64,000 bases of DNA from IMGVR_UViG_3300008261_000001:62001-126000, one strand, 5' to 3'; shown: positions 1 through 64,000, counted from the stretch's first letter. Notes: generated by a model from the sequence alone, not told the origin. Numbers and translations: made by a program.

Positions 1-112
1 AAACCGCCCTTACCCTTACCCTCCATATAGATCTACCTTATCCCTTATCCTCCATATAGACCCATATCCCTTATCCGCATATAGACCCTTACCCTTATCC
101 CATATAGACCGT
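1..112. repeat. Degenerate tandem repeat, about 4 units of CCCTTA(C/T)CC..CATATAGA
   Basis: CATATAG recurs at about 24, 53, 78 and 101, interleaved with CCCTTAC/CCCTTAT blocks; the array may continue left of the window. Confidence 0.8.
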
Positions 113-310
113 CTTACATATGAGGATTCATCTTGCTCCTTATATACGGCTGATTGGGGTGAGTGGTTTAGTTCGAAAAGGGGTTAGGATTCTGTTAAAT
201 TTTTCAAAATGGAAACTTGGAAAAGTGGTCCTAAAAATAGTTTTGGGTAAATTTTTTTGGGTTGATTTTGAAACCCCCTATTCTGCTTGAGTGTTTATAT
301 GTGGGCGTAG

Positions 311-348
311 GGTGTATTGGGCATAAGGTGTATTGGGCATAAGGTGTA
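311..348. repeat. 16-bp direct tandem repeat GGTGTATTGGGCATAA x2.4
   Basis: Exact copies at 311-326 and 327-342 plus partial GGTGTA at 343-348, just upstream of ATG 353. Confidence 0.9.
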
Positions 349-352
349 GTAT

Positions 353-784
353 ATGAGAGCAAAGACGACAAAGAACAGTGGGGGGGAGAGGGTGTGGGAG
401 GGTTGGGTATTGGATAAGTCTATATTGCTGTCGGGGGTGTTTGATTATGATTTAGCGTTGGGTTTGTATGAGGACATAGTGTGTGGTTTGGAGGAGTCTA
501 ATTTAAAGTTGAGGGGTAGTGGAGGTGGGGACAAGTACAAGATAAGGGAGTTTGTGGTGGGTAGTAGGGTTGTGAGGCAGGAGAGTTTGGAGTTATCGAT
601 GAGGATTTACTTAGTGCGGTCGAGTTTATTTGGTGGTGCTATATGTTATGACATAATGGTGGTGGGAGAGTTTGAGGATGAGGGTATGTTATCGGTATCG
701 GGTAAGAGGTTAGATTTGCCGATGGTGGAGGACTCTATATGGGTGGACATAAGGGTATGTTGGAGGAGTTTGGGAGGTGAGTAG
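353..784 (+). CDS. Hypothetical protein, 143 aa
   Basis: ORF with upstream AAGGTG; shares GERVW with the next ORF; extremely G-rich, C-poor coding strand. Confidence 0.6.
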   Translation: MRAKTTKNSGGERVWEGWVLDKSILLSGVFDYDLALGLYEDIVCGLEESNLKLRGSGGGDKYKIREFVVGSRVVRQESLELSMRIYLVRSSLFGGAICYDIMVVGEFEDEGMLSVSGKRLDLPMVEDSIWVDIRVCWRSLGGE

Positions 785-800
785 TTGGGAGGTGACTAAG

Positions 801-1139
801 ATGAACGAGGTAGGGGAGAGGGTATGGAGGGAGGAGTGGGTGTGGGTTTTTGTAAGTTCTCATTTTACGGTAGAGAAGAGGGAGTATGTATTACACCGAG
901 GGTTGAGGGAGGCTGGGTTTGAGTTATTTTCGCCTGTGGGGGGATTTATTTACGAGTTGGGTGTGTTAGTGGGTGGGGAGCCGAGGTATATAAGGGTGTG
1001 TGGTCTTGAGTCGGATGGTGGACTTGAGATAGGGATATACAATAAGTGGGATTTATTAGTTCGTGGTGAGTTAAGTGGGGGGGAGTGGGGGCTTTTATGG
1101 GAGCGTATAAGGGGGTTATGGGTGAGTAGTTTTGTATAA
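801..1139 (+). CDS. Hypothetical protein, paralog of 1164-1535
   Basis: ATG 801 follows GGAGGTG (preferred over the track start 777). It shares VLHxGLxExGF, GGFxYEL, YNKWDxL and LWERIRxLW with the next ORF. Confidence 0.75.
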   Translation: MNEVGERVWREEWVWVFVSSHFTVEKREYVLHRGLREAGFELFSPVGGFIYELGVLVGGEPRYIRVCGLESDGGLEIGIYNKWDLLVRGELSGGEWGLLWERIRGLWVSSFV

Positions 1140-1163
1140 GGGGCTTGGTAAGGAGGTTAGAGC

Positions 1164-1535: not shown

Positions 1536-1542
1536 TCGGGGT

Positions 1543-28165: not shown

Positions 28166-28233
28166 ATTATCCCAACTCTCTTTGAGTCTTATTATTGGGT
28201 AAGTGTTAAGACCCATTCTCAAAGGAGTCTCCC

Positions 28234-28416: not shown

Positions 28417-28477
28417 CGGTATAAAGGGGGGGTGTGGATAATCAAGTCCCACCTTTTCACCCTTTAGAGGACGCTCT

Positions 28478-37400: not shown

Positions 37401-37858
37401 AAGACAAACACCTAAAAACACGGATTATCCAATGCGACTTGATTGCCTCTAACTCCCCTTGTTGTAGGCGGAAAGTGGGGGCTTTGGTGATAGACCCAGA
37501 GAGTAATGTGGTTATTTCCGAGGGGTACAATGGAACACCACGAGGATCTACTTATCCATTGTGTGGCGGAGAGTTCTGTTTAAGGGAAGAGTTATCCATT
37601 AAGAGTGGGACACAAAACGATGTGGGGTGCATACACGCGGAACAGAACGCAATCTATAATGCCTCAAGGACAGGGAACAGCACACTCAACAAGTGGATGA
37701 TCACTAACTGCGACCCTTGCCTTATGTGTGCGAAGGCTATTCACCAAGCGGGAATAACAAGGGTCTATCTACCTCTACACGAGCAAGTCCACATAGAGGG
37801 CGTAAAGTTCCTCAGAAACAACCAAGTAGAACTCATTAAGACGGAGAGCTTCAAATGA
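37397..37858 (+). CDS. dCMP deaminase
   Basis: SPCCRRKVGA, GYNGTP, HAEQNAI and PCLMC zinc-deaminase motifs. Confidence 0.9.
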   Translation: MKDKHLKTRIIQCDLIASNSPCCRRKVGALVIDPESNVVISEGYNGTPRGSTYPLCGGEFCLREELSIKSGTQNDVGCIHAEQNAIYNASRTGNSTLNKWMITNCDPCLMCAKAIHQAGITRVYLPLHEQVHIEGVKFLRNNQVELIKTESFK

Positions 37859-41132: not shown

Positions 41133-42278
41133 ATGAAGGTCACTATAGAGAACTTTCAGTCTATTGAACACACCGAGTTTGAGGTGAAGGGGCTTACGGT
41201 CATAACAGGTCCAAACAACACGGGTAAATCAGCGTGTGCAAGGGCTGTTATAGGGGCTTTCACCAACACAAGGGGGTCTAGCTTTGTCCGTCAAGGTACA
41301 AAGGGCTGTAGGGTTCAAATCGACTTCAAAGATGGGAAAAGCCTTGTTTGGGAAAAGGGGAAAAACACTAACCGATATGAGGTCGATGGCTTCGAGATCA
41401 ACAAGGTCGGCTCTGGAGTTCCAGACGAGGTCAAACAGCTTGGGGTTGTGGCTGTAGAGGTGGATGGAAAAGAAGTCTATCCACAAATTGCCAAGCAGTT
41501 TGAGCAGATTTTTCTTTTGGATATGCCACCGAGCGTTTTGTCTAGTGCTTTGTCCGATGTGGATAAAATCCAAGTGTTGGAGCAAGCTACTGCGATGGCA
41601 CGAAACGAGGTTAAGAGCATAAACAATAGGATAAAAGTCAAATCGGAGGACTTAGATCTAGAAAGGAAAAAAGTAAAAGCATTTGATGAACTGTACTTGG
41701 CACAACAAGCGAATCTTGTAGTCCAATCCTTACAAAACGAGTTATCCAATTTAGAACAAACAGTAAAGGTTTTAGGGGATATAATGGATAAAAGGTCTCA
41801 GTGTAAAAATATATTAAGTGTGTTGGGTGATGCTGTTCAAGTGTCTTTACCAGACACTAGAGCGGTTTATGATTTCGACAGGATACCAGAGCTTGAGCGG
41901 ATAAAGCGTGAGAGATCCAAGTGCTTACTATTGGATAAGTCTATATCTATTGGTTTGGATTCTTTACCGAGTCTTCCAGAGATTAAGGGCTTTGAGAAGA
42001 TAGAAAACCTAGAGCGTATTGTTGGTGTTCGTAATGGATATATTCAGTTATCGAGAGGTTTATCCAATATCCAAGAAATGAACATGAGTTTCAGTTCTGC
42101 CGAGGTGGAGCAGGTTATCCTATTTTTAGAGTACATGGAAAAGAGGAACGACTTAGCTTCAAAGTTAAAAGTTGCGGACTTGGAGGTAGAGCGTATATCG
42201 GATGAGTTAAGCTCACTGAAGACATCTTTAGGTGCTGTGTGTCCGCTCTGTGAGAAGGCGTGTGGGGATACACATTAA
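41133..42278 (+). CDS. N-terminal half of an SbcC/Rad50-like ABC ATPase ending at a zinc hook
   Basis: IENFQSI, ITGPNNTGKSA Walker A, Q-loop region, coiled coil and C-terminal CPLC. Confidence 0.85.
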   Translation: MKVTIENFQSIEHTEFEVKGLTVITGPNNTGKSACARAVIGAFTNTRGSSFVRQGTKGCRVQIDFKDGKSLVWEKGKNTNRYEVDGFEINKVGSGVPDEVKQLGVVAVEVDGKEVYPQIAKQFEQIFLLDMPPSVLSSALSDVDKIQVLEQATAMARNEVKSINNRIKVKSEDLDLERKKVKAFDELYLAQQANLVVQSLQNELSNLEQTVKVLGDIMDKRSQCKNILSVLGDAVQVSLPDTRAVYDFDRIPELERIKRERSKCLLLDKSISIGLDSLPSLPEIKGFEKIENLERIVGVRNGYIQLSRGLSNIQEMNMSFSSAEVEQVILFLEYMEKRNDLASKLKVADLEVERISDELSSLKTSLGAVCPLCEKACGDTH

Positions 42279-48905: not shown

Positions 48906-49421
48906 ATGAAAGAACCTGCATGGGTCACATTAGAGATAACACCACGCGGTGAAGAGGAAGCAAGAGCTGGAAGGTTGAGAAGCCTCCTCTCAAATAGAAG
49001 TCCATTTAAAGAGGAGGACATCTATATCCCGATCATTAGGTCGGGGAAAGACCCAGTTTTTTTACTTGAGGGGTACATATTCATAAAGTGGGGGTATCCA
49101 ACAAGCGACTATGTGCATCTGAAACGCACACCGTGGATATCGGGTTTAATGGCGAGGATTGACCCAAGAACGGGTCTTATCAGTAGCGGTGTGCTAAAGG
49201 ATAAAGACCTAAAGGCAATGGTCAAGAGGGCAGATAACATGGGGGGCAAGTTTCAGATAGGGGACTTGGTGGAGATAAAGTCTGGTGAGATGAAGGGGTT
49301 CTCTGCCATTGTGATGGATTGGTGGATGAACGAAGAGGGTTTAAGAAGCTATACGCTCCTTATTGAGTTACGGAGCGTAGAGGTTGTCTTATCCGTCGAT
49401 TGCCTATCTTTGGAGGGGTGA
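48906..49421 (+). CDS. NusG/RfaH-like transcription factor
   Basis: NGN-like N-terminus (IYIP..EGYIFI) plus KOW motif FQIGDLVEIKSGEMKGFSAIV. Confidence 0.75.
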   Translation: MKEPAWVTLEITPRGEEEARAGRLRSLLSNRSPFKEEDIYIPIIRSGKDPVFLLEGYIFIKWGYPTSDYVHLKRTPWISGLMARIDPRTGLISSGVLKDKDLKAMVKRADNMGGKFQIGDLVEIKSGEMKGFSAIVMDWWMNEEGLRSYTLLIELRSVEVVLSVDCLSLEG

Positions 49422-49422
49422 T

Positions 49423-49992
49423 ATGGACTCTAAGTTAATGGAAAGATTGTTTTCATCTGAACAGGGGTTGCACACACTACCCACTGCACCAGAGGAGCTA
49501 TCCGAGGAAGCAAAGGGTCAGTTAGCGACTATAATAGAGAACATGGGGCGAATATCTCCCTTAGAAGCTGATCTGTTGGAGATGTATTTGCTCAAAGGGG
49601 TCAGTCAGGCAACTCTTGGTAAGATTTTTCAGTACACCCAACCGAATATCCATTACAGAATAAATAGGGGTTTACAGAGGCTCCGTGTGTTTGTAAGCAT
49701 ACGAATCTACACAGAGGAAGAGCTAAGGAAACGCTTATCCACTTTTTTCACCGACACAAAAGACATAGAGGTAATGACGCTCATTTATGTACACTCTAGT
49801 CAGAGCTTGGTAGCCCGTATGATAGGTGAGTCACAAGGTAAAGTTAGATATCGTTACCTCAAGTGCATAAAGGCACTCGAACAAGCTCCATCGCTTCAAG
49901 ATGTGTATCTAACCCTCAAGTCCATAGGTGACAATATCACCCTACTGAGAAAACACAAAGACGACGACCTTGAGAAGAAGGTCATATTATGA
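49423..49992 (+). CDS. Tandem sigma-70 region 4-like HTH protein
   Basis: ATG 49423 after GGAGGGG; two units, ISPLEADLLEMYLLKGVSQATLGKIF..RGLQRL and VMTLIY..SQSLVARMIG..KCIKAL. Confidence 0.65.
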   Translation: MDSKLMERLFSSEQGLHTLPTAPEELSEEAKGQLATIIENMGRISPLEADLLEMYLLKGVSQATLGKIFQYTQPNIHYRINRGLQRLRVFVSIRIYTEEELRKRLSTFFTDTKDIEVMTLIYVHSSQSLVARMIGESQGKVRYRYLKCIKALEQAPSLQDVYLTLKSIGDNITLLRKHKDDDLEKKVIL

Positions 49993-50296: not shown

Positions 50297-53200
50297 GTGC
50301 TTCATATGCTTTTCCTAAGAAATAAAAACAGATCGGTGGTTCCCTTTAAGGGGGAGCTGTTCAAGATGATAGAGACGAAGTTCTCTAGGATTCCAGTCTT
50401 GAACGCTATGGGTCAGCAGATAGTGGATCCTTCCACCAAGAAGGTCAAGACGACAAAAGCTGAAGAAGTGACGATGCCCTTTTTCGTCTATAACTCTCTT
50501 GTGTCCTTAGACGAGTATGTCATGGGCAAAATGGAGCAACTAGAGGCGGATAAGGATAGGAAAAGGGTTAAGTCAGACTTAACGACTAAGTTCGCTGCGT
50601 CTTGGCGGTTTATACTTCGTAGGTGGACGGTGACCGCCCCCAAAGGCATGAGGGACAACTGCGTTAAGATCGAAAGATTTATCGAAGCACTCGACAACGA
50701 AATGGAAAACCTTATCAACGATAGGAATACCCCCTTCACAGAGAAGGTTAAAGCCATCAAAGATTATGCGAAGAGTACCGAGGGCAAAAAGCTCATGGAG
50801 CTTTACTGCGACTTCATGCGTAATGTGTTTCAGACCTTCGGCATGGTCGTGGCAGTATCCATTAAGGTCAATAACAGAGTCGGTGTAAGATATCTTCAGT
50901 TCAAGCTCGGCTCTCAAGTAGAGGCTATGCTTGAGGAAGCAAGCAACTCTGAAAAGGTTCGTATCGAACGAGCCATGAAGATGACCGAACTTCGTGATCT
51001 CAAGCTCAAAGCCCAAATGGATAACATGGGCTATGTTGTTGAGTCTATGCCCGTCTACGGAGATGGGGATAAACCCATCTTCGCCCTCGTAGCGTACGAC
51101 CCCGCATACAAGCAAATCCCCGTACCCAAAGTCCCCACAAGGGTAAAAGTAAGTGACGAGGAAAAGAAGCTCATTAAAGAGCTTTATCCCAACGAACAAG
51201 GGCTTTATTCAGTACTCCCCCCTAGAGCCACAAAGGAAGACAGGGATAGGCTTTTGGAAAGGATTGAGTTCCTTAAAGAAGAGATTAAGGATCAAATAGG
51301 AAAGTCACAAAAATTCTATCTCCCTGGTTATGGGATAAAACCTGATGGGACACCAGAGAAAACGGATAAAAACGGCAAGCCTATTTACAAGTACATAAAT
51401 ACAGAAACTGAACGCAGAAAAGCCGCTAGAGCCGCTAAAGCACTAGAAAAACTGCAATACAATATGAGCCTTCAGCTCTCTTCCAATGTAACCAAAGAAA
51501 TCAAAGATCAATACAGAAGGGCTATAGAGCCTTACATCAAGGGCATATACCACCCCAACTTCACCACAAACCTCGGCAACGAGTACGAGTACTTCCCCTC
51601 GCTACAAGCCTTAAAGGATAAAATAGCAGTACAACAAGCCTCTAGTACTGCTATTCAAACCGTACTCGTCCCTGAGTTCCAAACACAGAAGGTCAATGTG
51701 CCTAACTATCCTGTTTGGGATGATGTCACGCAGAAGATTAAGTATGAGTCCAAAGATCTCACTGTACCCGTGATAACAATCGGACCAAACAACACCGCAG
51801 TACCCCACTACGCAACAGAGCTTGCTAGTGTGAACTACGAAAAAGACGAAATCGTCACTAGAGAGATCAGGGACTTCGGTGAATCCCAAGTCGTAGGTAG
51901 TGGGATTTCTCGCTCTGTAGAGACAAAGCAGATAGTAGTAAACGGCTCACCAAAGTCTCTCATCGTAAAGGGTCGCTATGCAGGCTATCTCTTAGAACAC
52001 ATCGTTAACCTTGAGGGTAAGTTCATCGAGGGTGGGTACATCAACAAGGTTGGTGGAGATAACAAGACGGTCTCCCTCCTTGAAGACCGCATGATTGTTA
52101 AGGACGGAGTAGTACAGACCATAGACTACTTAGCGGACAATAAGGTACGCCAACGCTTAATCGAGCCTTATGTGACCCTCACAGAAGATGGGCAGTCGCT
52201 CTTGTTGGGTCTCCCTGGATCATCCCCTCGTGGGATAAATCTCGACCATAGCATAATGGATAAACTATCCAAAAAGGTAGCCACTATTGAGAAGGTGATC
52301 AATAAGGATATACCAGAGTCTCACTCATGGCATAGGTCTCGTAACCCTTACTACACCTTCAAGGTTGAAGACTTTGAGCTAGTTCGTAAGAGCCTCGGTT
52401 CTGTTGGTGTGAGCAAGCCAGCCTCCGACTTCATTGACGCTTATTTCAATAAGCTCAAAGCACAAGAGGCGGCGATGGCTGTAGAAAACCTAGAACGCTT
52501 CACCCCAGCGTCTCTAGGTGGCTTCGTTAAGCAAACGGATAGAGGCCCGTTTAGGTTCAACAATAAGCAACTCGAAGCCCTTGCTTGGATCGACTCCGCT
52601 GAAATGAAGGGTGTAGTCGGTCTAGACACAGGTGTAGGAAAGACGGTGACGGCTCTCGCCGCCATCAAGAACGCCATAAACCAAGAGATGTACGAGGGGC
52701 TACCTAAGCGTAAGTTCCTATTCGTATCGCCTGCTCGTCTTGTGGGCAACCTCAAGAAAGAGATAGATGCCTACATGGATGAGGGTGGTGAAGAAGTCAC
52801 TCTCGCTGACGGCACTAAGGATGTGTCTCCAAACTGGCGTAAGATACTCAACGACCGCGTGGTCGAGATGTCTTATGACAAGTACACGGAAACTTTCCAA
52901 GATTTCGGTGGGCAGTTCGCCTCCACAGAAGAGGGTTCTAAGCTACTGGAAGAGTTATCCGTTCTAGAGAGAGAAATACAGCTACAAGGTCGTCCCGTTG
53001 ACCCTAACAACCTAGAGGGCGAAAAGCACCCCACCCTAAGCGATAAGCAACTAGAGGCTAAGAAAAAGCTCATCAAAGAACTCAAGAAGCAAATCCGTCT
53101 GCTTCAAAAGGCACTCGTGGTGGAGAGTTATCCTAAAGCGGATAAGTATTTCCAAAAGGAGTTCTATGCCTGCTTCTTTGACGAGGTGAACGAAGCCCTT

Positions 53201-55882
53201 GTTGGGGATAAGAGGAAAGCCCTCGCCTCTCTCAAGCACCCTCGTAAGGTTTTCCTTACCGCCTCTACCATGCAGAAGGATCCCCTCGACCTTTACAGAT
53301 TCGTTACGCTCGCTAAGGGTGCAGATTACTCAGCGGCAGATGAAGAAGCCTTCGTTAAGAAATACGGAAATGTCGTGGGCGGTCGCTTTGTAGGCATCAA
53401 GAACGACCCTGAGGCTCAGAGAGAGTTCTACACATGGGTCAAGGAAAACGCTTTCTTTGCCTTTAAGGAGAGCGTCAACTATGAGGAGGTTGGCTTACCC
53501 AAGCTACTCCCCAAGACCTCACGCACCTTAACGGTTAAGATGCCACAGGCTGTTCAAAACGCCTATAAGCAAGAGGCTTCTAAAATCAAACGCGAACTCG
53601 CAGCCATGCTCAAGAAGTATCGTGACTTGAGTGCTGAAGAGCTTTCCTCATACAGCGACACCGAGGATGACGACTTCAGAGAGCTTAATCCCTCCGCTGT
53701 GGGTCGTGGCAGAAACCGCACCATGCAGAAGAAGCTACTCCAAGACTACGCTCAGAAGTCTCTTACACCGCTCATTAAGAAGCTCATGAAGCTATCCAAT
53801 AGACCTGAGAGCGTTATCAAGGGAGCTAAAAATGTAAAGGTGGAACAGGCTGTTGCTCTAGCCCTTGAGTACAGAACAACTAAGACCCTTTACTTCACCG
53901 CAGATAACCTCTTAGCTGTAGAGACAGGTAAGAGCATCAGTAAGAAGATGCCTGCAAAAGTCGTAGCTGTGTGCTTACCAGAAGCTATCCGCTTCTATCA
54001 AGCGGGCAAGCTCATCTACACCGTCAACTCAAGGGATAACCTCTCCCTTGAGCAGTTTGAAAAGCTAGATGTGGCTAAGATCATCAAGCGTTCAAACGAA
54101 ATGCCTGAGGGTGAAGAGATGGAGGCTGAGGCTACATGGGCAATGGATATCTCCAAGCAGTACATCAACAACAACCCCCACATCGGGTCTACCGTGTGTA
54201 CTGACGCTTATGCGTTCGGCTTTAACTTCCAAACCTTCACCAAAGTTATCCATTTGGATAGAGGTGCGGGATTCAACTCCGAAGTGATTAAGCAACGCAC
54301 AGCTAGAGCCTATAGAGCGGGACAAGACAAAGAGGTCGAAGAAATCTTCATCGACACCACAATGAGTGAAGCCACAGACTCACCCACCGCTGTGTCTCAG
54401 AATATCCAAGAGGGCGACATAGAGAACCTATCCATTGACGAGCTTCAGGGTCTAGTCGCCATGAAGGATCAAGAGTTCTTTACGGACATTATCCGTAAGA
54501 GCCTCACAATGGATTTAACCGCTGGTGCAGACGCAGTACAAAGAGACTCCTCTAAGGTGGTTAACTTCACCAACGAGATGCTCTCTTCTATTGTGGATCC
54601 TACGCCTCAGAACATCACCGCTCTTGAGGTACAGCTTGACGATTTTGAGAAGAATCCAGTAAATCATGTGTCTCTACCTGCGGATAGATATGCTCGGCTT
54701 AAAGGTAAATATAGTTTTGCTGTAGAGGGTTATCCACCTAAGAATTTAACTCTTATTCAAGCAATAAATACATTCACAAATGTGCCTGTAGAGCGTCTTT
54801 TCGACTCCATTGGGTTGTTCTTTAACAACTCAGACACAGAAAGCACTCAAAAAAGGATAAACATAGAAAAATATATGACTAAGGGATGGCAGATTTCCTA
54901 CCTAACACCCTTTGCCAGAACTACCGCTACAATAAAGTTTACTCAGGATACTGGTGAAGAGTATATTTATGGGGACTACACGGTGGCTGGAGAGTGTGCT
55001 CCAAGCGGTACTGGTATAAGGATAATGATTACCCGTGCCATATCCGCGATGAAGTCTGGTTTGAAGTCCGTGAGGAACACCTCTGCATTAACTGGTGGAC
55101 CGCGTGTGTGGCCGAAGGTTGGAATGAATGGTAAGGTCGATGTAGGTAGTATCGCAAACACTTGGAGATACAAGCATAACGGTTCTGCCGTTGCCGAACA
55201 GGAAGTAGAGTGGATGAAAGATCTTCTTGAAAGCGACAATAGCATCCTCAGGCTTATTGCTTCAGAGAGAAATCCTGGAGACAAGTTAGGTGAGCGTATG
55301 TGGTCTGCGGGAGCCCACGCTTTCAGCGGAAAAATAGACCTCACTCCAGGGAGTCTATCTCTACAGGTGCTGAACGGATACATTAAAAAGAAGTGTGAGC
55401 AGTTAGGCATAAGCGTACAAGATTACCTCACCGCACCACTAGAGCCTTTCGATCTCGAATCTGTGGATTGCTGGCGTAACCTAGCTAATGGGACTAAGTT
55501 CACTTATGAGGGGAAGGAAATAACCCTTGAGGAAGCAGCCTCGTTATTCCCCACAGAGTTCAAGATTGCCCTTAGGAGTAGTTCAATCCTTAGGGAAGTT
55601 TTGAAGTATTCCAAGCCAGAACTTTTGTCCAAGTATTTCCGCACACCTGTAGAACCCACGGTAGGGAGAACAGCCTCTCCTAGTCACAAGTACTCTTCTG
55701 AACAGCAAGAGGGTGTGGAAATGGATAGCATCCTTAAAGGCATGATGAATGACCCCATATTGGATAGTGTATGGGACGCTATTCGTAGGCAACACTCTAT
55801 CATCTCTATGGAGATAGACCTAGAGATAGACAGAGGCGACACCGACCTCTCACTCGTTGAGAAACTCAAAGGAGCTAACTGA
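50297..55882 (+). CDS. Large SNF2-like (SF2) ATPase with long accessory regions and a C-terminal GNAT-like segment
   Basis: LDTGVGKT (I), FFDEVN (II), LTAS (III), GFNFQ (V) and QRTARAYRAGQ (VI); the start may be ATG 50306 or 50366. Confidence 0.8.
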   Translation: MLHMLFLRNKNRSVVPFKGELFKMIETKFSRIPVLNAMGQQIVDPSTKKVKTTKAEEVTMPFFVYNSLVSLDEYVMGKMEQLEADKDRKRVKSDLTTKFAASWRFILRRWTVTAPKGMRDNCVKIERFIEALDNEMENLINDRNTPFTEKVKAIKDYAKSTEGKKLMELYCDFMRNVFQTFGMVVAVSIKVNNRVGVRYLQFKLGSQVEAMLEEASNSEKVRIERAMKMTELRDLKLKAQMDNMGYVVESMPVYGDGDKPIFALVAYDPAYKQIPVPKVPTRVKVSDEEKKLIKELYPNEQGLYSVLPPRATKEDRDRLLERIEFLKEEIKDQIGKSQKFYLPGYGIKPDGTPEKTDKNGKPIYKYINTETERRKAARAAKALEKLQYNMSLQLSSNVTKEIKDQYRRAIEPYIKGIYHPNFTTNLGNEYEYFPSLQALKDKIAVQQASSTAIQTVLVPEFQTQKVNVPNYPVWDDVTQKIKYESKDLTVPVITIGPNNTAVPHYATELASVNYEKDEIVTREIRDFGESQVVGSGISRSVETKQIVVNGSPKSLIVKGRYAGYLLEHIVNLEGKFIEGGYINKVGGDNKTVSLLEDRMIVKDGVVQTIDYLADNKVRQRLIEPYVTLTEDGQSLLLGLPGSSPRGINLDHSIMDKLSKKVATIEKVINKDIPESHSWHRSRNPYYTFKVEDFELVRKSLGSVGVSKPASDFIDAYFNKLKAQEAAMAVENLERFTPASLGGFVKQTDRGPFRFNNKQLEALAWIDSAEMKGVVGLDTGVGKTVTALAAIKNAINQEMYEGLPKRKFLFVSPARLVGNLKKEIDAYMDEGGEEVTLADGTKDVSPNWRKILNDRVVEMSYDKYTETFQDFGGQFASTEEGSKLLEELSVLEREIQLQGRPVDPNNLEGEKHPTLSDKQLEAKKKLIKELKKQIRLLQKALVVESYPKADKYFQKEFYACFFDEVNEALVGDKRKALASLKHPRKVFLTASTMQKDPLDLYRFVTLAKGADYSAADEEAFVKKYGNVVGGRFVGIKNDPEAQREFYTWVKENAFFAFKESVNYEEVGLPKLLPKTSRTLTVKMPQAVQNAYKQEASKIKRELAAMLKKYRDLSAEELSSYSDTEDDDFRELNPSAVGRGRNRTMQKKLLQDYAQKSLTPLIKKLMKLSNRPESVIKGAKNVKVEQAVALALEYRTTKTLYFTADNLLAVETGKSISKKMPAKVVAVCLPEAIRFYQAGKLIYTVNSRDNLSLEQFEKLDVAKIIKRSNEMPEGEEMEAEATWAMDISKQYINNNPHIGSTVCTDAYAFGFNFQTFTKVIHLDRGAGFNSEVIKQRTARAYRAGQDKEVEEIFIDTTMSEATDSPTAVSQNIQEGDIENLSIDELQGLVAMKDQEFFTDIIRKSLTMDLTAGADAVQRDSSKVVNFTNEMLSSIVDPTPQNITALEVQLDDFEKNPVNHVSLPADRYARLKGKYSFAVEGYPPKNLTLIQAINTFTNVPVERLFDSIGLFFNNSDTESTQKRINIEKYMTKGWQISYLTPFARTTATIKFTQDTGEEYIYGDYTVAGECAPSGTGIRIMITRAISAMKSGLKSVRNTSALTGGPRVWPKVGMNGKVDVGSIANTWRYKHNGSAVAEQEVEWMKDLLESDNSILRLIASERNPGDKLGERMWSAGAHAFSGKIDLTPGSLSLQVLNGYIKKKCEQLGISVQDYLTAPLEPFDLESVDCWRNLANGTKFTYEGKEITLEEAASLFPTEFKIALRSSSILREVLKYSKPELLSKYFRTPVEPTVGRTASPSHKYSSEQQEGVEMDSILKGMMNDPILDSVWDAIRRQHSIISMEIDLEIDRGDTDLSLVEKLKGAN

Positions 55883-55884
55883 AA

Positions 55885-56166: not shown

Positions 56167-56168
56167 TC

Positions 56169-57034: not shown

Positions 57035-57898
57035 CTACACACCCACCTCTTTAGCCGTTAAGTGTCCATTTTTGTACAGCCAATAAAGCTGAAGACCTAG
57101 CGTTGGAATAATCAGAGCGTTCCAACCTATCTGTAAAGACTTCATCACCCAACCTCCAGGGATACCAGGGAACATCAGCGTCACCAAGAACCCAAGCCCG
57201 CTCTCAGGTAATGACGCAAGCAACTCCCCCCATGAGATCATCCCTAGAAATCCCTTTAGGATATCCGTGATCTTCCAACTCACCTCCGTCACATTTATCC
57301 AGATTATCCAAAATATGTAGGCTTTAGCGGGAGTGGTTAAAGCGGACAATAAGGGGTTCGCCTCTAAGAACTTAGTCATCCAATCCGTCAGAGAGCGTGT
57401 GCCTTTGGTGAGCTTGCCCACATAAGCTGAAACAGCGGATCTCTTTTCCTCTGGTAGCTTCTTTATGAGGTCTGTCACTAAGGAGGTAAGCGTAGGGGCG
57501 TTGTTAGCGTAGGCAAAGAAAAACCTAACGAACGCATACTTGTCCTCTAAAGATTTCTTCTTTGAATCTATCCATTTTTTCCCCTCGTCCAAGAACTTCT
57601 CGAACTTGGTGGATAGCTCTTTGTAGAGGCTCAAAACATTCGTAGATGTGATGCCGAGCATCTCTTTGAACTGCTCCCACAGCTTAGGTGCTTTTTGGAA
57701 GCCTTGATAGATTTCTTTAATCTTTGAGACAAGCCCTTTGATACTCGCCCGCTTAACCGAACCTTTGAGGATTTGGTTTCCAAAGGGGATGAGGGTAATC
57801 TCGTTCAGTTCTTGGCGAACCAAATAAGCAGAGGCTGTACGAACTCTTGGGGATGTCCTTACAGCCTCTCTACAGGCAAAAGAGATTGTAGATCTCAT
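57035..57898 (-). CDS. Hypothetical protein with RTAS N-terminus and hydrophobic C-terminal helices
   Basis: YIFWIIWINV, LGFLVTLMFPG and WNALIIPTLGLQLYWLY hydrophobic stretches suggest membrane insertion. Confidence 0.7.
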   Translation of the reverse strand: MRSTISFACREAVRTSPRVRTASAYLVRQELNEITLIPFGNQILKGSVKRASIKGLVSKIKEIYQGFQKAPKLWEQFKEMLGITSTNVLSLYKELSTKFEKFLDEGKKWIDSKKKSLEDKYAFVRFFFAYANNAPTLTSLVTDLIKKLPEEKRSAVSAYVGKLTKGTRSLTDWMTKFLEANPLLSALTTPAKAYIFWIIWINVTEVSWKITDILKGFLGMISWGELLASLPESGLGFLVTLMFPGIPGGWVMKSLQIGWNALIIPTLGLQLYWLYKNGHLTAKEVGV

Positions 57899-57940
57899 AG
57901 TGGGTTATCCTATCTGTTTAAGGATAACCCACTATAAAAG
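57897..57940 (-). promoter_or_regulatory. CTTTTATA motif plus a perfect 15-bp hairpin occluding the RBS and start codon
   Basis: ATAGTGGGTTATCCT (57897-57911) / AGGATAACCCACTAT (57921-57935); the minus-strand 3' arm includes AGGA and the AT of ATG. Confidence 0.7.
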
Positions 57941-59883: not shown

Positions 59884-62800
59884 TCAGTTAGACCTAAGGA
59901 ACTCCCGCATAGCTTCCATAAAGCTAACGCTTGCAGTACGAGTATCGAGGGAGATCTCGGGTTGGATACAAGCCTCAGAGATGAAGGGGGAAGGACCGCC
60001 CTTACCCTTATTCCCACGGTCTGAGGGGTTTCTGTCAGGACCATAAAGAATCTTAACGCGGTCTTGCCCACGAGTGATAGCCACATAAGCAAGCCTACGC
60101 TCAGACTCTATATCAGAGCGAGGGTCTGGGAAGTATCCATTTGTCATAGGGAGGTACATATCCCTACACTCAAGACCTTTCCAAGCGTGCATGGTGCCGA
60201 GGAACACAGAGTTCTTATTTCGACCACCCTCTTCGTTGGACTTATCCGCCATCGTCTTCGACTGTTTCTTTAGCTCAAAGAAGAAGGTCAACCCATCTTC
60301 GAGGGTTCGTTTCTCGAACACACGATGGACTACGCGGGTTCCAGACTCAGCGTACTGAGCCATATCATCCAGAGTGACCTCGCCTGACTCGGTCTCTCTG
60401 GATAGATCGTCGATCTCGGCAGCGGACAAGTTTTCACCCGTGCGTTCCAAGAGGTTCTTACCATCTAGACCACGGATATTACGGCACACAAAGTCTATCA
60501 GTTCTGAGTTAGTCCCTTCGAAGTCCATAATAGACTTCAAAGCATCCGCATACGCCTTAGCATTGGACAATCTCTTGGTTTGGCTTGAAGGATAGAGCGA
60601 CCTCCAACCGCCATTCACCAAGAAATCTAAGGGGTGTTGCCCAGCGTGTCTTGCTTGCTCATCTAGGCTGGCATTGAACTGAGAGTCGATGTAAAACAAC
60701 AAGTGCTTGTGAGCCATCTTAACGGCTTCAAGTTTGTACACTGGATTGTTTGAACGAACCGACATCAAGTGAACAGGTGCAAGCATTGTGGCTGTGTTCA
60801 TTAAGTCTCTCTTACAGAAGTAAGGAACTCCAGCTACCAATAACTCAAACGCATATCCAGTCAGTTCTGCGTTTGTACGGCAACCAATACCGAACTTGTG
60901 TTGCTCACCATTTTGGTGAGACCAACCCTCAATCTCAATAATCTCAGAGATCTCCTTAGCCACCTCTACAGCACCAGGTGATTGGGGTGTCGATGTATTG
61001 ATGTGATCCTCTGAGGTAATCCGACCCTCTTCTTTTGTGGGTGTAGGATTACAAACCATAGGGATTTGTTTGGTGTTATGGGCGATGAGTTTATTAGCCG
61101 CTTGGACGATGTTGCGACCTGATCTAAAGTTTGTCCTTAAAACAGATGTCTTGAACTCACCATTGTAAGCGTCTGAGATGTTGATGAACTCCTCGGGTTG
61201 AGCACCTCTAAACTCGTAAATGGCTTGCTTGTCGTCACCAATGAAGCAGTATGTGTCTGCCGTCATACGACCATCACCATATGGCTGTAAGGTCTCGGGA
61301 TTAATATGACCTGCAATAAGACCGAACAGAGTGTGTTGTGCCTTATTTAAGTCTTGTGCCTCGTCTACGAAGATGTACTTGTAAGCCGCCTGCATGGAGC
61401 GGAGCTTAGACGGATTCTCTACAAGGGATTTATTCGCCCACACCAAAAGGTCGTCATAATCAGCGAGCTTCTCCCTTGTCTTAAAGTACATATAAGCACC
61501 ATAAACTGCCGCTACCGCTCCACCATTGCCCCCAGACCAAAGCTCGGTGGGTGACACCATATCCGCCATGTAGATACCGATCTCCTTCATGTAATCGGAT
61601 ACCTTCTGGTCTTTAGAGAGGACATCTTCCCTCTCGTAGCCAATGTTAAACCACTGCCCTACAGGCTCAGGTTTACCAAAGGGAGGGAAAGAGGCGAACT
61701 TACCCGTAAAGCCAGGAAATGGACCAGCCTTTTGGATAGAGTTCTGCCCACGATTTGTGGTGATGAGAGCATTAACTGTATCCCTAAAACCCCTATCGTC
61801 CCAAATGGGACTGCTCGGAGGTAAGAATGTGATGTTCCCTCTGTTGTCGATGTTTTGGATAGATGGACGAATCTTATCCAAATCACCTCTACCCCACGAC
61901 ATATTGTTATTTATAGCCCAAATCGCCTTCTCACCGATTACGCGGGCGGTCTCAATAAGAAGTCTCTTTAGCTCGTCCACTTGTTGTGTGTTTCCAGCCG
62001 CTTGATCCACTTGTACGCTCATAGACTGAAGTGGAGCGGCGGCGAGGGCGAGGTTAATGAAAGGTCTAACAAGTGGAGGGGTATTACTAGCAGGGTGATA
62101 AAGCATAACCTGCTCTATAGCCGCCTTCATCCACGCCTCTGCCTTAGACTCTGACATTAGCTCCACACCCCTAAGAAAACCAGAATCGGTACAAATCTTA
62201 TGGGAGATAGAGTGTGTCGTAGAGCCAATAAAACGACCAGAATCCGATGCTCCATTCGAGTACTTAGATGCCCTAGACTTCAACTCGTTAGAAGCCTCCT
62301 TGCCGAAGGTCGTGGCGATTATCTGATCAGGGCTGGCACCTAACTCGTTAATGGTGTAGGCGATCTTAGATGCCAACACACGAGTCTTACCAGAACCTGC
62401 ACCCGCAGCAATAATCGACTTACCCGTCACCATCATCGCTTCCTCTTGCTCTGGAGTGAGCCTTTGGATCTCTCCAGTTCGAGTTTGGAAACTTGTGTTG
62501 GTGTTGATTACACGACCCGCCTCTGCCAACAAAGCCTGCCTGTCTTCCGAACCTTTCGTCATATCCAAGAGCTTGTCGTACAAAACCTCGCGGTTTTGAA
62601 GCATCTTGATCTGCTCCCCTTCAGGCAAACCACCCGCCCTGATCCTCGCATCTAAGCTCTTAATCTCCCCCGCCAGCTTCGCTACCTCCCTTATGTCCCT
62701 AAGGCTTTGCTCCACAGGGTTCGCTTGCTCCAATAGAGCACACGCATCAGCTATCCATTTCCCTATCGACTGTGCCTTGCTCGCCCTCTCGACTAAGAGT

Positions 62801-63255
62801 AGACCGTTAAGATCCACCATAACATCAAGACAAGCATTGCTAACCCCAATCAAAGCTACTTGAGTCGGCTTATCTGTAAAAGCTGACTTCAAAAGAGGCT
62901 GACGAGTTTTAAACCAACCAAAAACACTCTTATAAACACGGCTTACAGCCACCACACGCTTTATCGTGACTTGTGGCGTCCCGACCAACCTAGATAAATA
63001 AGCCACTAAACGAGGCTTACTCTTTAAACCGTCAAACGCCTGCCCCTCAAGCAAACTTAAAATAGACTTCTCAGTTTCGAGAAACTCCTCTTTGAAACGC
63101 CTCAAGAGAGCCTCCGCATCTCCCATTAAAGCAGAAACATCGACACCGCTCTCTACAGAAAGCTCCTCAACAGCCCTAACAGCTAGAGAAAACTTGATTA
63201 AATCAGCTTGAAGCCTTGTCTCAGGCAAGGGTCCAGTAGCGGTCTTTACTCTCAT
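59884..63255 (-). CDS. UvrD/PcrA-like SF1A helicase with an N-terminal extension of about 260 aa
   Basis: LTPEQ, AAGAGSGKT, THS, VDEAQD, GDDKQAIYEFRGA, NFRS, RTNA, TMHAWKGLE and ERRLAYVAITR. Confidence 0.9.
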   Translation of the reverse strand: MRVKTATGPLPETRLQADLIKFSLAVRAVEELSVESGVDVSALMGDAEALLRRFKEEFLETEKSILSLLEGQAFDGLKSKPRLVAYLSRLVGTPQVTIKRVVAVSRVYKSVFGWFKTRQPLLKSAFTDKPTQVALIGVSNACLDVMVDLNGLLLVERASKAQSIGKWIADACALLEQANPVEQSLRDIREVAKLAGEIKSLDARIRAGGLPEGEQIKMLQNREVLYDKLLDMTKGSEDRQALLAEAGRVINTNTSFQTRTGEIQRLTPEQEEAMMVTGKSIIAAGAGSGKTRVLASKIAYTINELGASPDQIIATTFGKEASNELKSRASKYSNGASDSGRFIGSTTHSISHKICTDSGFLRGVELMSESKAEAWMKAAIEQVMLYHPASNTPPLVRPFINLALAAAPLQSMSVQVDQAAGNTQQVDELKRLLIETARVIGEKAIWAINNNMSWGRGDLDKIRPSIQNIDNRGNITFLPPSSPIWDDRGFRDTVNALITTNRGQNSIQKAGPFPGFTGKFASFPPFGKPEPVGQWFNIGYEREDVLSKDQKVSDYMKEIGIYMADMVSPTELWSGGNGGAVAAVYGAYMYFKTREKLADYDDLLVWANKSLVENPSKLRSMQAAYKYIFVDEAQDLNKAQHTLFGLIAGHINPETLQPYGDGRMTADTYCFIGDDKQAIYEFRGAQPEEFINISDAYNGEFKTSVLRTNFRSGRNIVQAANKLIAHNTKQIPMVCNPTPTKEEGRITSEDHINTSTPQSPGAVEVAKEISEIIEIEGWSHQNGEQHKFGIGCRTNAELTGYAFELLVAGVPYFCKRDLMNTATMLAPVHLMSVRSNNPVYKLEAVKMAHKHLLFYIDSQFNASLDEQARHAGQHPLDFLVNGGWRSLYPSSQTKRLSNAKAYADALKSIMDFEGTNSELIDFVCRNIRGLDGKNLLERTGENLSAAEIDDLSRETESGEVTLDDMAQYAESGTRVVHRVFEKRTLEDGLTFFFELKKQSKTMADKSNEEGGRNKNSVFLGTMHAWKGLECRDMYLPMTNGYFPDPRSDIESERRLAYVAITRGQDRVKILYGPDRNPSDRGNKGKGGPSPFISEACIQPEISLDTRTASVSFMEAMREFLRSN

Positions 63256-63263
63256 AAGTAGCT

Positions 63264-63307
63264 CCTATGTGTGCTTAGATTATCCAAACACACATAGGGT
63301 TATAAAC
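63264..63307 (-). promoter_or_regulatory. GTTTATAA motif plus RBS-occluding hairpin
   Basis: CCTATGTGTG (63264-63273) / CACACATAGG (63289-63298) covers TAGG of the TAGGAG SD. Confidence 0.65.
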
Positions 63308-63317
63308 AAAGTATAAA

Positions 63318-63992
63318 TTATAAACCCTTTGCCCCAATCCTTACATACCCACGCCTAGAACCTAACTCCCAATCACTACTTCTTAACAAGAGCTTCTTCG
63401 CACTACCTCGCCCCAAAAATACCACCTGCTTAGTCGTGTTGTTCCTTAAGTCTACACTCGCACTCTTAAACTCATAACCCAACCTCAACTTGTCCAAGTA
63501 CTCCCCACGAGCCACCGACACAACATCACCACTTGGACTCACCAACAACACCGGCTTATCCGACCACGACTTCACCTGCCCTTCCGACTTCACTTGCTTT
63601 ACTCCCTCTAGATTGGAAATCACATCGTAGTTCACCCTCTCAAGTCCATAATGCGTCCCAAACTGAAAACCATGCTCCACCACCAAGTGCTTCACCACAT
63701 CATGCTGTCCACAGCTATACACACCTATGTCCGAGCGGTAAATGTTCACCACCCCCTTCGAACATAAAGACCAACCTAATCGAAAATAATCGGATAACTC
63801 ATCTCGGTTAATGGATAAAACCACTCCGTTTTTCTCTATCCTTATTGGCTTAACCATGTTGCTCCTTCTAAGGTTCTCTCTCCTAGAAGCACAGCGAAAC
63901 CTACCCCTCAACCACTCCATGAAAATCGGGTCCCTGAGCTTAATCTTATAGGCTTCTATCCTTTTAACAGCTACGGAACCTTGCCTAGACAA
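63318..63992 (-). CDS. Hypothetical protein with an internal duplication; possibly 5'-truncated by the window edge
   Basis: KPIRIEK..LSINRDELSDYFRLGW and KPVLLVS..VSVARGEYLDKLRLGY; no in-frame stop before position 64000. Confidence 0.55.
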   Translation of the reverse strand: MSRQGSVAVKRIEAYKIKLRDPIFMEWLRGRFRCASRRENLRRSNMVKPIRIEKNGVVLSINRDELSDYFRLGWSLCSKGVVNIYRSDIGVYSCGQHDVVKHLVVEHGFQFGTHYGLERVNYDVISNLEGVKQVKSEGQVKSWSDKPVLLVSPSGDVVSVARGEYLDKLRLGYEFKSASVDLRNNTTKQVVFLGRGSAKKLLLRSSDWELGSRRGYVRIGAKGL

Positions 63993-64000
63993 GAGTACTT

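What the first reader, a model, noticed from the sequence alone, without database searches (positions are those of the whole stretch)
1..64000. Genome-wide over-representation of TTATCC/GGATAA, a DnaA-box-like core
Seen: a manual, approximate tally gives 40-45 copies (both strands) in the first 17 kb, against roughly 10 expected from base composition, and it stays frequent throughout. It sits in coding DNA through unusual codon pairs (TTA TCC AAT/GAT for LSN/LSD; TTG/ATG GAT AA for LD/MD-K/N), in both orientations, in three of the regulatory hairpins and in the left-edge repeats. The usual extension is TTATCC(A/G)(A/T); perfect DnaA boxes (TGTGGATAA) occur at 28433 and 41558. Inference: a DNA-level selected site, for example for a nucleoid or packaging protein, a Chi-like signal for the phage nucleases, titration of host DnaA, or a target of the MTase array.
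Basis: partly seen in the sequence, partly recalled or inferred. Interest (0 to 1): 0.66.

Follow-up and report, generated by a model that had tools for sequence, protein, structure and literature searches.

The report
Huge phage saturated with private DNA word
A 290-kb phage genome and its closest kin are peppered, about once every 340 bases on either strand and in genes and spacers alike, with a short asymmetric DNA word (TTATCC plus an A/T-rich tail) that their nearest relatives lack. This points to an unidentified sequence-reading system private to this phage lineage, not to a DnaA box or a codon-usage quirk.

Summary
TTATCC/GGATAA occurs 212 times in the window (35 expected) and 860 times in the 290-kb genome, and it is the top hexamer. 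A shuffle that also limits new avoided palindromes gives the same null.

The full word is B-TTATCC-W-W-T-A. It is unpolarised, Poisson-spaced, found in all frames, and densest in non-coding DNA. G000 uses 35% of all positions where the protein sequence permits it (9.5% expected; 6–10% in relatives). The enrichment is confined to one sub-clade (G000 plus a kin genome with about 65% amino-acid identity) and is absent from three complete relatives. Synonymous sites inside the word are still conserved between the two motif-bearing lineages.

It is not a DnaA box, because the CACA half sits at chance level. The same hexamer occupies the −35 position of about 25 promoters found only in this genome, and it recurs in an iteron-like array.

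Best reading (confidence about 0.4): a dispersed recognition word for a phage-encoded HTH-type DNA reader. The reader protein and the benefit of high density are not identified. Rivals are a modification-enzyme target, a Chi-like signal and a host-imposed signal.

The parts
1..64000 (.). Dispersed word B-TTATCC-W-W-T-A: 212 hexamer copies in the window (92 on the + strand, 120 on the - strand), of which 36 match the 10-mer TTATCCWWTA. Part of 860 copies genome-wide.
   Evidence: nulls
1..110 (+). Iteron-like array: four units of CCCTTA(T/C)CC..CATATAGACC at 23-29 bp spacing, holding five CTTATCC copies. It lies in a 658-bp intergenic region (genome 61695-62352). Possible origin or control region.
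28167..28199 (+). The window's copy of the promoter class: TTATCCCAAC, N14, TATTATTGGG, with TTATCC in the -35 position. About 25 such promoters exist genome-wide, and only in G000.
28433..28441 (-). TGTGGATAA, a perfect DnaA-box string. It is one of 13 in the genome, which is the number expected by chance given 860 TTATCC copies.
41558..41566 (-). TGTGGATAA, the second perfect DnaA-box string in the window; same comment as for 28433.
57897..57935 (.). Intergenic hairpin with a 14-bp stem, ATAGTGGGTTATCC..GGATAACCCACTAT, carrying the word in both arms.
29694..30158 (-). 154-aa protein with two to three HTH units of homeodomain-like / sigma70 region-4 type. It is family-wide but fast-evolving (34-37% identity to syntenic homologues in motif-free kin). 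Candidate reader, unproven.
   Evidence: structure model too poor to use
49384..49992 (+). 202-aa protein with a sigma70 region-4 domain, next to clamp-loader genes. Present in all kin (60% identity in G002-G004, 81% in G001).
33213..38637 (+). Tandemly amplified array of split N6/N4-adenine/cytosine MTase modules, with a dCMP deaminase gene inserted (37397-37858). Homologous modules exist in motif-free kin. The targets are unknown.
50297..55882 (+). 1861-aa SNF2-type ATPase with unassigned N- and C-terminal regions. Present in G001 (59%) and in motif-free G003 (36-47%), so it is excluded as a sufficient cause.
59884..63255 (-). 1123-aa UvrD-like helicase. Its gene is the most motif-poor in the genome (2 sites against 10 expected). 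It is shared with motif-free G003 (56%) and G004 (31%).

Best explanation
SHOWN. TTATCC, as the 10-bp asymmetric word B-TTATCC-W-W-T-A, is a DNA-level signal that arose in one sub-clade of a family of roughly 300-kb freshwater-type phages and is still being maintained there. It has been written into whatever sequence allows it. 35% of all synonymous opportunities are used, and up to 80-95% for some tripeptides. Amino-acid usage has been nudged to create more opportunities. Spacers are even denser than genes. Sites are scattered at random, in both orientations, with no relation to gene starts, gene ends, transcription direction or genome arm.

INFERRED. I infer that the word is the recognition site of a sequence-specific double-stranded-DNA reader encoded by the phage, most likely a monomeric or multi-HTH protein. 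The same hexamer sits at the -35 position of about 25 promoters that exist only in this genome and drive its clade-restricted early genes. It also forms the core of an iteron-like array. Those are the two contexts where a protein reading TTATCC on duplex DNA is expected.

The hundreds of extra promoter-less copies would then be selected for number, not position.

The reader protein and the benefit of high density are not identified.
For: Not codon usage: synonymous and codon-order shuffles give z=22-38. Not a by-product of palindrome avoidance: the constrained shuffle gives the same null, and the avoidance is family-wide whereas the word is not. Not a redistribution among GGATN words: GGAT itself rose from 611 to 1073 per 100 kb, all of it in GGATA(A).

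Non-coding copies: 89 against 16±4 expected, with the same W-W-T-A tail as coding copies. Graded, PWM-like neighbours: TTATCC 5.5x, CTATCC 2.9x, GTATCC 1.9x, ATATCC 1.5x, while changes at the other five positions give 0.4-1.4x.

Saturation of permissible sites: G000 35% and G001 32%, against 6-10% in G002-G004.

Clade restriction: TTATCCAAT has 154 copies in G000 and 21 in the 61-kb G001 fragment, but 0, 2 and 1 in three relatives of 297-376 kb that CheckV rates 95-100% complete. Orthologous positions in G002 carry the word in only 3% of cases.

Ongoing constraint: given identical amino acids, the hexamer is identical between G000 and G001 at 57% of sites against 26% for background (OR 3.9, p=2e-7).

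Spacing and position: exponential gaps (CV 1.04) with no preferred distances; flat metagene profile; no orientation bias relative to transcription (25 against 21).

Promoter link: 40 TTATCCCAA copies, 25 with a (T/C)ATTA(G/T) box 20-30 nt downstream, against 1 of 820 other sites. This class is absent from G001-G004.

Candidate readers exist: several HTH proteins in the clade-restricted early region, and a fast-evolving multi-HTH protein.
Against: No reader has been identified. Every specific candidate tested by phylogenetic profile is either shared with motif-free kin (SNF2 giant, UvrD-like helicase, 405-aa MTase paralogues, multi-HTH protein, sigma-like ORF) or has no recognisable DNA-binding domain (the 742-aa protein of the one operon restricted to the motif-bearing genomes).

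The promoter copies have a different tail (CAA[G/C]) from the dispersed copies (W-W-T-A), so one protein need not read both. The coincidence could also arise because a genome-wide drive reshaped promoter -35 boxes.

The promoter class was not found in the G001 fragment, although G001 has the dispersed word. That fragment covers only about 20% of a genome and lacks the early region.

Selection for site number cannot be told apart from a sequence-specific mutational or repair drive using sequence alone. The host is unknown, so a host-encoded reader is not excluded.
Confidence: 0.4

Rival explanations
1. Target of a phage DNA-modification enzyme: one of the amplified N6/N4-MTase modules, a 405-aa gamma-type MTase paralogue, or another modification system. 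High density would be favoured because modified sites shield the genome or serve as strand or self marks. Alternatively it would arise as a by-product ratchet of modification-coupled repair, as Elhai proposed for HIP words in cyanobacteria.
For: The word is a short asymmetric sequence containing adenines, like the targets of Type IIG/III/BREX-type MTases (my knowledge). G000 has a tandemly amplified MTase array and three Eco57I-like 405-aa paralogues. Elhai's model links newly gained or duplicated MTases to new iterated words at about 1 per kb (PMC4390886). A PP-loop/QueC-like gene sits among the MTase paralogues.
Against: All kin, motif-free ones included, carry 6-9 such MTases, and G003 shares the 405-aa paralogues and the neighbouring block. 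There is no C5-MTase, no MutS and no MutH in the phage, and only a sub-threshold Vsr-like hit in a gene that G002 also has. One-mismatch neighbours show no clear substrate depletion beyond what other avoided words explain. The HIP precedent concerns palindromes. An MTase target does not explain the -35 and iteron usage.
Confidence: 0.2
2. Chi-like signal. The word would attenuate or redirect a helicase-nuclease, either the phage's own or the host's RecBCD/AddAB. That would protect phage DNA ends and stimulate RecA-dependent recombination or replication. Both orientations are needed if ends are permuted.
For: The phage encodes RecA, a RuvC-like resolvase, an SbcC-like ATPase and a UvrD-like helicase. 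Chi is the classic over-represented self-marking oligomer, and phages are known to gain host Chi sites (PMC3784561). The density and presence in all frames resemble Chi and uptake words.
Against: No polarity: gaps and orientation are random, and the only arm skew is z=-2.9 in the first 90 kb after correcting for coding strand. RecA, RuvC and SbcC are in all kin, and the UvrD-like helicase is shared with motif-free G003 and G004, with its own gene the most motif-poor in the genome. Known Chi sequences are G-rich and read on single strands (my knowledge), whereas this word is A/T-rich and is reused at a -35 position.
Confidence: 0.12
3. Host-imposed signal. The word would be read by a host protein (nucleoid protein, transcription factor, uptake or repair system), or would reflect a host-specific mutational bias. 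It would appear in this clade because the clade moved to a new host.
For: Clade restriction could equal host restriction. Promoters of early genes are normally read by host RNA polymerase (my knowledge), and they contain TTATCC.
Against: Nothing positive was found. The word persisted through G000-G001 divergence to about 65% amino-acid identity with slightly different 'dialects' (G001 uses more CTATCC and TATCCG), which fits a co-evolving private reader better. A simple mutational bias would not give 80-95% saturation at particular tripeptides or a defined 10-bp consensus.
Confidence: 0.1
4. Titration of host DnaA by DnaA-box-like sites.
For: TTATCC is the first six bases of the E. coli-type box TTATCCACA. 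Two perfect boxes lie in the window.
Against: ACA follows TTATCC in 1.5% of sites, which is chance level and only the 17th-ranked extension. The preferred tails are AAT and ATT. The positions invariant here are the ones DnaA tolerates, and the CACA half it needs is missing (my knowledge of the box consensus TTWTNCACA). The phage has no DnaA domain IV homologue.
Confidence: 0.02
5. Statistical or compositional artefact: codon-pair bias, protein repeats, or a side effect of extreme palindrome avoidance.
For: The genome does have extreme 4-mer avoidance, and ordinary coding words such as CTCAAG reach 3-5x over base-composition expectation.
Against: All nulls fail to explain it. Intergenic density exceeds coding density. 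Relatives with the same avoidance and the same G+C lack it. Sites are spread over all genes (chi-square 355 on 310 df).
Confidence: 0.01

Closest known systems
Uptake sequences (USS of Pasteurellaceae, DUS of Neisseriaceae)
   Same: A short asymmetric core with a weaker A/T-rich extension. About one copy per kb or denser, on both strands equally. Found in all reading frames inside genes through favoured codons and peptides. Lineage-specific 'dialects'. Maintained for number and not for position.
   Different: Those are bacterial and tied to a competence uptake receptor. Here the carrier is a virulent-type huge phage with no such machinery. The density is higher (1 per 340 bp for the core). Inverted terminator pairs are rare (one clear case). 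The word doubles as a promoter -35 element.
Stoperators/operators of Cluster A mycobacteriophages (L5 gp71-type repressor; PMC9283540, PMC6550527)
   Same: An asymmetric word read by a monomeric phage protein with two DNA-binding domains. The same word is used at an early promoter and at many dispersed sites in the phage genome.
   Different: There are more than twenty stoperator sites per ~50-kb genome, in short intergenic gaps, strictly oriented with transcription. Here there are 860 sites, mostly inside genes, with no orientation rule (25 against 21). No reader has been identified and there is no evidence of lysogeny.
HIP1 and alternative highly iterated palindromes of cyanobacteria (PMC4390886)
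   Same: A genome-saturating word at about 1 per kb, in coding and non-coding DNA. New words appear sporadically in single lineages. A link to gained or duplicated MTases has been proposed.
   Different: HIPs are palindromes containing an MTase site and occur in cellular genomes. This word is asymmetric and sits in a phage, and no cognate MTase or repair partner could be assigned.
Chi sites (RecBCD/AddAB)
   Same: An over-represented self-marking oligomer that sits in coding DNA through common codons. Phages can accumulate it.
   Different: Chi is strongly strand-polar and G-rich, and is read on single-stranded DNA. This word is unpolarised and A/T-rich, and is reused in duplex-DNA contexts.
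DnaA box (TTATCCACA)
   Same: The first six bases are identical.
   Different: The defining CACA half is absent. There are 13 perfect boxes among 860 sites, which is chance level. There is no clustering with the box consensus.

Membership tests
DnaA box | 9-mer TT(A/T)TNCACA with a conserved CACA 3' half | tested here: not met
   After TTATCC the extension ACA occurs 13 times in 860 (1.5%, 17th rank). The preferred extensions are AAT (154) and ATT (86).
DnaA box | Tolerance at box positions 3, 5 and 6, with strictness at positions 7-9 | tested here: not met
   Here positions 2-6 are strict (neighbours at 0.4-1.4x) and positions 7-10 are degenerate. The DnaA tolerance pattern comes from my own knowledge.
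DnaA box | A DnaA domain-IV reader | tested here: not met
   No Bac_DnaA_C match in the phage at E<=1. Host DnaA is not testable because the host is unknown.
Chi site | Statistical over-representation in the genome | tested here: met
   5.5x over composition and 2.5-2.9x over the synonymous null.
Chi site | Strand polarity relative to replication or to DNA ends | tested here: not met
   411 against 449 overall. The sense/antisense split of 408 to 363 is explained by the GGA-TAA stop frame. The only arm skew is z=-2.9 in the first 90 kb.
Chi site | A cognate helicase-nuclease that co-occurs with the word | tested here: not met
   The UvrD-like helicase is shared with motif-free G003 and G004. 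No AddB/RecC-type partner was recognised.
Uptake sequence (USS/DUS) | Both strands equally, all frames, core plus weaker flanks, about one or more per kb | tested here: met
Uptake sequence (USS/DUS) | Frequent inverted pairs forming terminators | tested here: not met
   No excess of inverted pairs at any distance. There is one 14-bp-stem hairpin in the window.
Uptake sequence (USS/DUS) | A DNA-uptake receptor that prefers the word | not testable with these tools
   This needs the host and an experiment, and it is conceptually inapplicable to a phage chromosome.
Stoperator-type dispersed operator | An asymmetric word also present at an early promoter | tested here: met
   TTATCC sits at the -35 position of about 25 promoters of clade-restricted genes.
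Stoperator-type dispersed operator | Intergenic location and orientation tied to the direction of transcription | tested here: not met
   771 of 860 sites lie inside genes. Orientation is 25 against 21 in co-directional spacers.
Stoperator-type dispersed operator | A cognate monomeric two-domain repressor | tested here: inconclusive
   Multi-HTH proteins exist, but none could be tied to the word. The single-sequence structure model was poor (pLDDT 56).
HIP-type iterated word | A palindrome containing an MTase site | tested here: not met
   The word is asymmetric.
HIP-type iterated word | Co-occurrence with a lineage-specific MTase | tested here: inconclusive
   MTase counts are 8, 4 (fragment), 6, 9 and 7 in G000-G004. 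Specificities are unknown.
KOPS/AIMS-type polar word | Strong skew that switches at the replication terminus | tested here: not met

The most novel reading that the evidence does not exclude
The word is the address label of a previously undescribed phage 'self-marking' system. A private sequence reader, co-evolving with its 10-bp word, would distinguish the phage chromosome from host DNA, for transcription takeover, selective packaging, or protection from the phage's own or the host's nucleases. Its advantage would scale with copy number, so the whole genome has been recoded at synonymous sites to carry it. That would be a viral counterpart of uptake sequences or Chi, with a new reader family still to be found among the clade-restricted early genes.
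Probability: 0.3. Interest if true: 0.85.

Novelty: new variant of a known kind. Interest (0 to 1): 0.72.

Why it matters
Genome-saturating short words (Chi, uptake sequences, HIP1, KOPS) have each led to a piece of DNA-handling machinery. As far as I know and as far as the literature searches showed, none has been described as a private feature of a huge-phage lineage.

Here the signal is unusually clean. It has a dated origin: it is present in two lineages that have diverged to about 65% amino-acid identity and absent from three complete relatives with the same G+C. A third of all synonymous opportunities have been recoded. Purifying constraint is demonstrably still acting.

That makes the reader protein findable by a short list of experiments. 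It also offers a natural test case of how strongly a non-coding DNA signal can override codon choice in a virus. In practice, the word is also a sensitive marker for recognising members of this phage clade in metagenomes.

Tried and rejected
1. Codon usage, amino-acid order or palindrome avoidance as the cause: rejected.

2. Redistribution among GGATN words after new avoidance of GGATC, GGATG or GGATT: rejected.

3. A family-wide 'each lineage has its own word' idea. CTCAAG in the relatives behaves like ordinary coding words (realised/expected 1.9 against 1.2-2.2 for controls; sparser in spacers). No other clade shows an extended dispersed word.

4. SNF2 giant, UvrD-like helicase, 405-aa MTase paralogues, the modification-gene block, the multi-HTH protein and the sigma-like ORF as clade-specific causes. 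All have homologues in motif-free kin.

5. The 742-aa protein of the only operon restricted to the motif-bearing genomes: no Pfam, PDB or convincing Atlas match. It has an HExxH signature, so it is probably an early anti-defence protease and not a reader.

6. Dcm/Vsr-type drive or phage-borne methyl-directed repair: no C5-MTase, MutS or MutH.

7. Fold of the multi-HTH protein: the single-sequence AlphaFold model was too poor (pLDDT 56) to search with.

8. Host inference. Megablast against the phage collection found nothing.

9. Collection-wide pattern scans for other motif-dense contigs were designed but not run. Chance matches would have swamped the capped output.

10. Literature searches found no description of this word in phages.


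Full report
WHAT THE WINDOW IS. The window is bases 62,001-126,000 of a single 290,179-bp virus record with 47% G+C, rated about 93% complete. It encodes phage tail-fibre-type giants, RecA, a clamp loader, an MTase array and similar functions. Megablast against the phage collection found nothing. The best RecA match there is a 485-kb uncultured phage at 51% identity. RecA-based retrieval from the viral collection gave 41 related loci. I then obtained these in full:
- G001: a 61-kb kin fragment with about 74% DNA identity and about 65% amino-acid identity over 48 reciprocal best hits.
- G002 (297 kb), G003 (376 kb) and G004 (312 kb): three relatives that CheckV rates 95-100% complete.

TTATCC/GGATAA occurs 212 times in the window against 34.6 expected and is the top hexamer. 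It occurs 860 times in the genome against 156 expected, evenly over all 10-kb bins. The word extends to [not A]TTATCC[A>G][A/T, almost never G][T>A][A]. TTATCCAAT occurs 154 times against 2.9 expected, and TTATCCWWTA occurs 132 times. The word lies in all three frames, in both orientations relative to the sense strand, and in spacers.

- Permuting synonymous codons within each gene, which preserves protein sequence and codon usage, gives about 162 copies per strand against 411 and 449 observed (z about 30).
- Permuting codon order gives about 128 per strand.
- For the window alone the synonymous null is 69.7±6.5 against 212 (z=22; the maximum over 200 shuffles was 92).

While doing this I found that the genome has almost completely purged several 4-bp palindromes: ACGT 0 of 1126 expected, GCGC 0 of 909, CCGG 33, GGCC 48, AATT 87. 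A synonymous shuffle that also rejected swaps raising the total count of these words left the null unchanged. That constraint was on the summed count only, so a few individual words drifted upward. The avoidance is shared by the whole family, whereas the TTATCC enrichment is not. The enrichment is also not a reshuffling among GGATN words. GGAT itself rose from 611 to 1073 per 100 kb, all in GGATA(A), while GGATC, GGATG and GGATT are unchanged relative to G002.

HOW HARD THE GENOME HAS BEEN RECODED. Of all positions where the amino-acid sequence would allow the hexamer by synonymous choice, G000 realises 35% (752 of 2150; 205 expected from codon usage). G001 realises 32%. G002, G003 and G004 realise 6%, 10% and 8%, each equal to or below its own expectation. 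Individual tripeptides approach saturation: M-D-K 18 of 19, L-D-K 50 of 64, T-D-K 26 of 32, W-I-N 7 of 7. Permissible positions are 21% more numerous than in G002, so protein sequence has been nudged as well. Strictly non-coding DNA holds 89 copies against 16±4 expected. After the promoter class is removed, these show the same W-W-T-A tail as the coding copies, so the tail is a property of the DNA word and not of codons.

ANATOMY OF THE DISTRIBUTION.
- Gaps between sites are exponential (CV 1.04), with no preferred spacing and no excess of direct or inverted pairs.
- Density is uniform across genes (chi-square 355 on 310 df). Core genes have 2.96 sites per kb and clade-specific genes 2.63 per kb.
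- The metagene profile is flat, apart from GGA-TAA gene ends.
- The slight excess of sense-strand TTATCC (408 against 363) is explained by the stop codon in one GGATAA frame.
- In co-directional spacers the orientation split is 25 against 21.
- After correcting for coding strand, only the first 90 kb shows a weak skew (z=-2.9).
- One-mismatch neighbours behave like a graded binding matrix: position 1 is T>C>G>A (5.5, 2.9, 1.9 and 1.5x), and positions 2-6 are strict.

ORIGIN AND MAINTENANCE. The enrichment is found only in the closest clade: loci L002-L007, with RecA identity of 87% or more, and G001. TTATCCAAT has 154 copies in G000 and 21 in G001, but 0, 2 and 1 in G002-G004. At positions orthologous to G000 sites, G002 carries the word in 3% of cases, so the sites were gained in this lineage. 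Between G000 and G001, 31% of sites are retained in place against 13% for background hexamers. Amino-acid conservation at those codons equals background (47.7% in both). Given identical amino acids, the hexamer is identical at 57% of sites against 26% (odds ratio 3.9, p=2e-7). The constraint is therefore still acting in both lineages. G001 has a slightly different dialect, using more CTATCC and TATCCG.

The relatives' top word, CTCAAG/CTTGAG, is an ordinary coding word. Its realised-to-expected ratio is 1.9, against 1.2-2.2 for control words, and it is sparser in spacers than in genes. No other clade shows an extended dispersed word.

IT IS NOT A DnaA BOX. However, ACA follows TTATCC in only 13 of 860 sites, which is chance level and 17th in rank. 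The phage has no DnaA domain-IV homologue.

WHERE THE SAME HEXAMER IS USED IN A DEFINED CONTEXT.
- Promoters. Forty copies have the tail CAA. Of these, 25 are followed 20-30 nt downstream by (T/C)ATTA(G/T), usually with a G-run, and are preceded by an A/T tract, with a gene start 40-80 nt further on. This is classic -35/-10 geometry with TTATCC as the -35 hexamer. Only 1 of the other 820 sites has such a box. The class clusters in a block of roughly 37 small genes at 36.7-56.5 kb, nearly all without homologues in G002. It recurs next to a sigma-factor homologue at 270.8 kb. It is absent from G001-G004. The window's copy is at 28167.
- Iteron-like array. Window 1-110 holds four units, each containing CTTATCC, inside a 658-bp spacer. 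Further repeat-rich spacers lie at 133.2-135.0 kb.

These are the contexts where a protein reading TTATCC on duplex DNA is expected.

The following all have homologues in at least one motif-free genome, so none is a sufficient cause:
- the SNF2 giant (window 50297-55882);
- the UvrD-like helicase (59884-63255; its gene is the most motif-poor in the genome, 2 sites against 10 expected);
- three 405-aa Eco57I-like MTase paralogues and the neighbouring PP-loop gene block;
- the multi-HTH protein (29694-30158);
- the sigma-like ORF.

Within the 20% of the G001 genome available, only a 108/742/106-aa operon (G000:41770-44645) and a few small ORFs are restricted to the motif-bearing genomes. The 742-aa protein has an HExxH signature and no DNA-binding match. 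A batch scan of 43 clade-restricted small proteins, followed by a genome scan, found HTH proteins in the early region: G000:40943-41776, 52556-52954 and 55270-56553. These are the best remaining candidates. No C5-MTase, MutS or MutH is encoded, and the only Vsr-like hit is sub-threshold and lies in a gene that G002 also has. The host could not be inferred.

INTERPRETATION. Shown: a clade-specific, actively maintained DNA-level word that has recoded a third of the permissible synonymous sites of a 290-kb phage genome. Inferred, with about 0.4 confidence: it is the recognition word of a phage-encoded duplex-DNA reader, and the dispersed copies are selected for number, marking or concentrating factors on the phage chromosome. 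Rivals are a modification-enzyme target (0.2), a Chi-like signal (0.12), a host-imposed signal (0.1), DnaA titration (0.02) and an artefact (0.01). The nearest known phenomena are uptake sequences, for the genomic pattern, and mycobacteriophage stoperators, for a phage word used both at a promoter and at dispersed sites (PMC9283540). It fails defining features of each, as the membership table shows. I therefore file it as a new variant of the 'iterated word' kind and not as a member of any named family.

Noticed in passing
whole genome; window 1-64000: Near-total purge of 4-bp palindromes: ACGT 0 copies (1126 expected), GCGC 0 (909), CCGG 33, GGCC 48, AATT 87, CGCG 212. GAAT/ATTC is at 0.35 and CCAG/CTGG at 0.42 of expectation. 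ACGT, GCGC, CCGG and CGCG avoidance is shared by kin loci L002-L026, so it is ancestral to the family.
   Followed up: partly
window 33213-38637: Tandem amplification of split N6/N4-MTase modules: alternating ORFs of about 200 aa, with copies 80-88% identical in DNA. There are three to four modules here against one or two in G002. A dCMP deaminase gene sits inside the array at 37397-37858.
   Followed up: partly
G000:36700-56600 (outside the window); window 28167-28199: A block of roughly 37 small genes, nearly all without homologues in G002, served by a genome-specific promoter class: A/T tract, TTATCCCAA(G/C), N15, (T/C)ATTAG(G/T)GGG. The block also encodes an Fe/Mn superoxide dismutase (G000:45499-46107).
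   Followed up: partly
window 1-110 and G000:133240-134970: Iteron-like repeat arrays in long spacers: four units of CCCTTATCC..CATATAGACC, plus GGATAGATAGAGAGAG and GATAGAACTTATCAG repeats. These are possible origins of replication or control regions.
   Followed up: no
whole genome: GATC is half as frequent as in G002 (240 against 499 per 100 kb). It is over-represented (1.3-1.9x) in most other kin loci but under-represented (0.62x) here.
   Followed up: no
window 59884-63255: The UvrD-like helicase gene has only 2 motif copies where 10 are expected (p=0.003). The longest motif-free stretch of the genome is G000:156195-159826 (G+C 53-55%). Either could be a recent import or be under a different constraint.
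   Followed up: no
G000:272100-278500 (locus L065): A gene block downstream of TTATCCCAA promoters, holding two 405-aa Eco57I-like MTase paralogues and a PP-loop ATPase (Asn-synthase/QueC-like). It is shared with G003 at 52-87% identity and absent from G002 and G004. Possibly a DNA-modification cluster.
   Followed up: partly
G000:41770-44645 (locus L066:5770-8645, minus strand): An operon of 108, 742 and 106 aa found only in the two motif-bearing genomes. The 742-aa protein has an HExxH metalloprotease signature and weak structural echoes of ArdC/M78-type anti-restriction proteins.
   Followed up: partly
window 8749-16725 and 16812-23954: Two giant ORFs of 2658 and 2380 aa on the minus strand. 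The first starts with an Mtd_N domain (major tropism determinant), so it looks like a tail-fibre-type protein and may indicate a diversity-generating retroelement target.
   Followed up: no
window 57897-57935: An intergenic hairpin with a 14-bp perfect stem whose arms each contain the word (GGGTTATCC / GGATAACCC). It is the only strong inverted pair of the word in the window.
   Followed up: no
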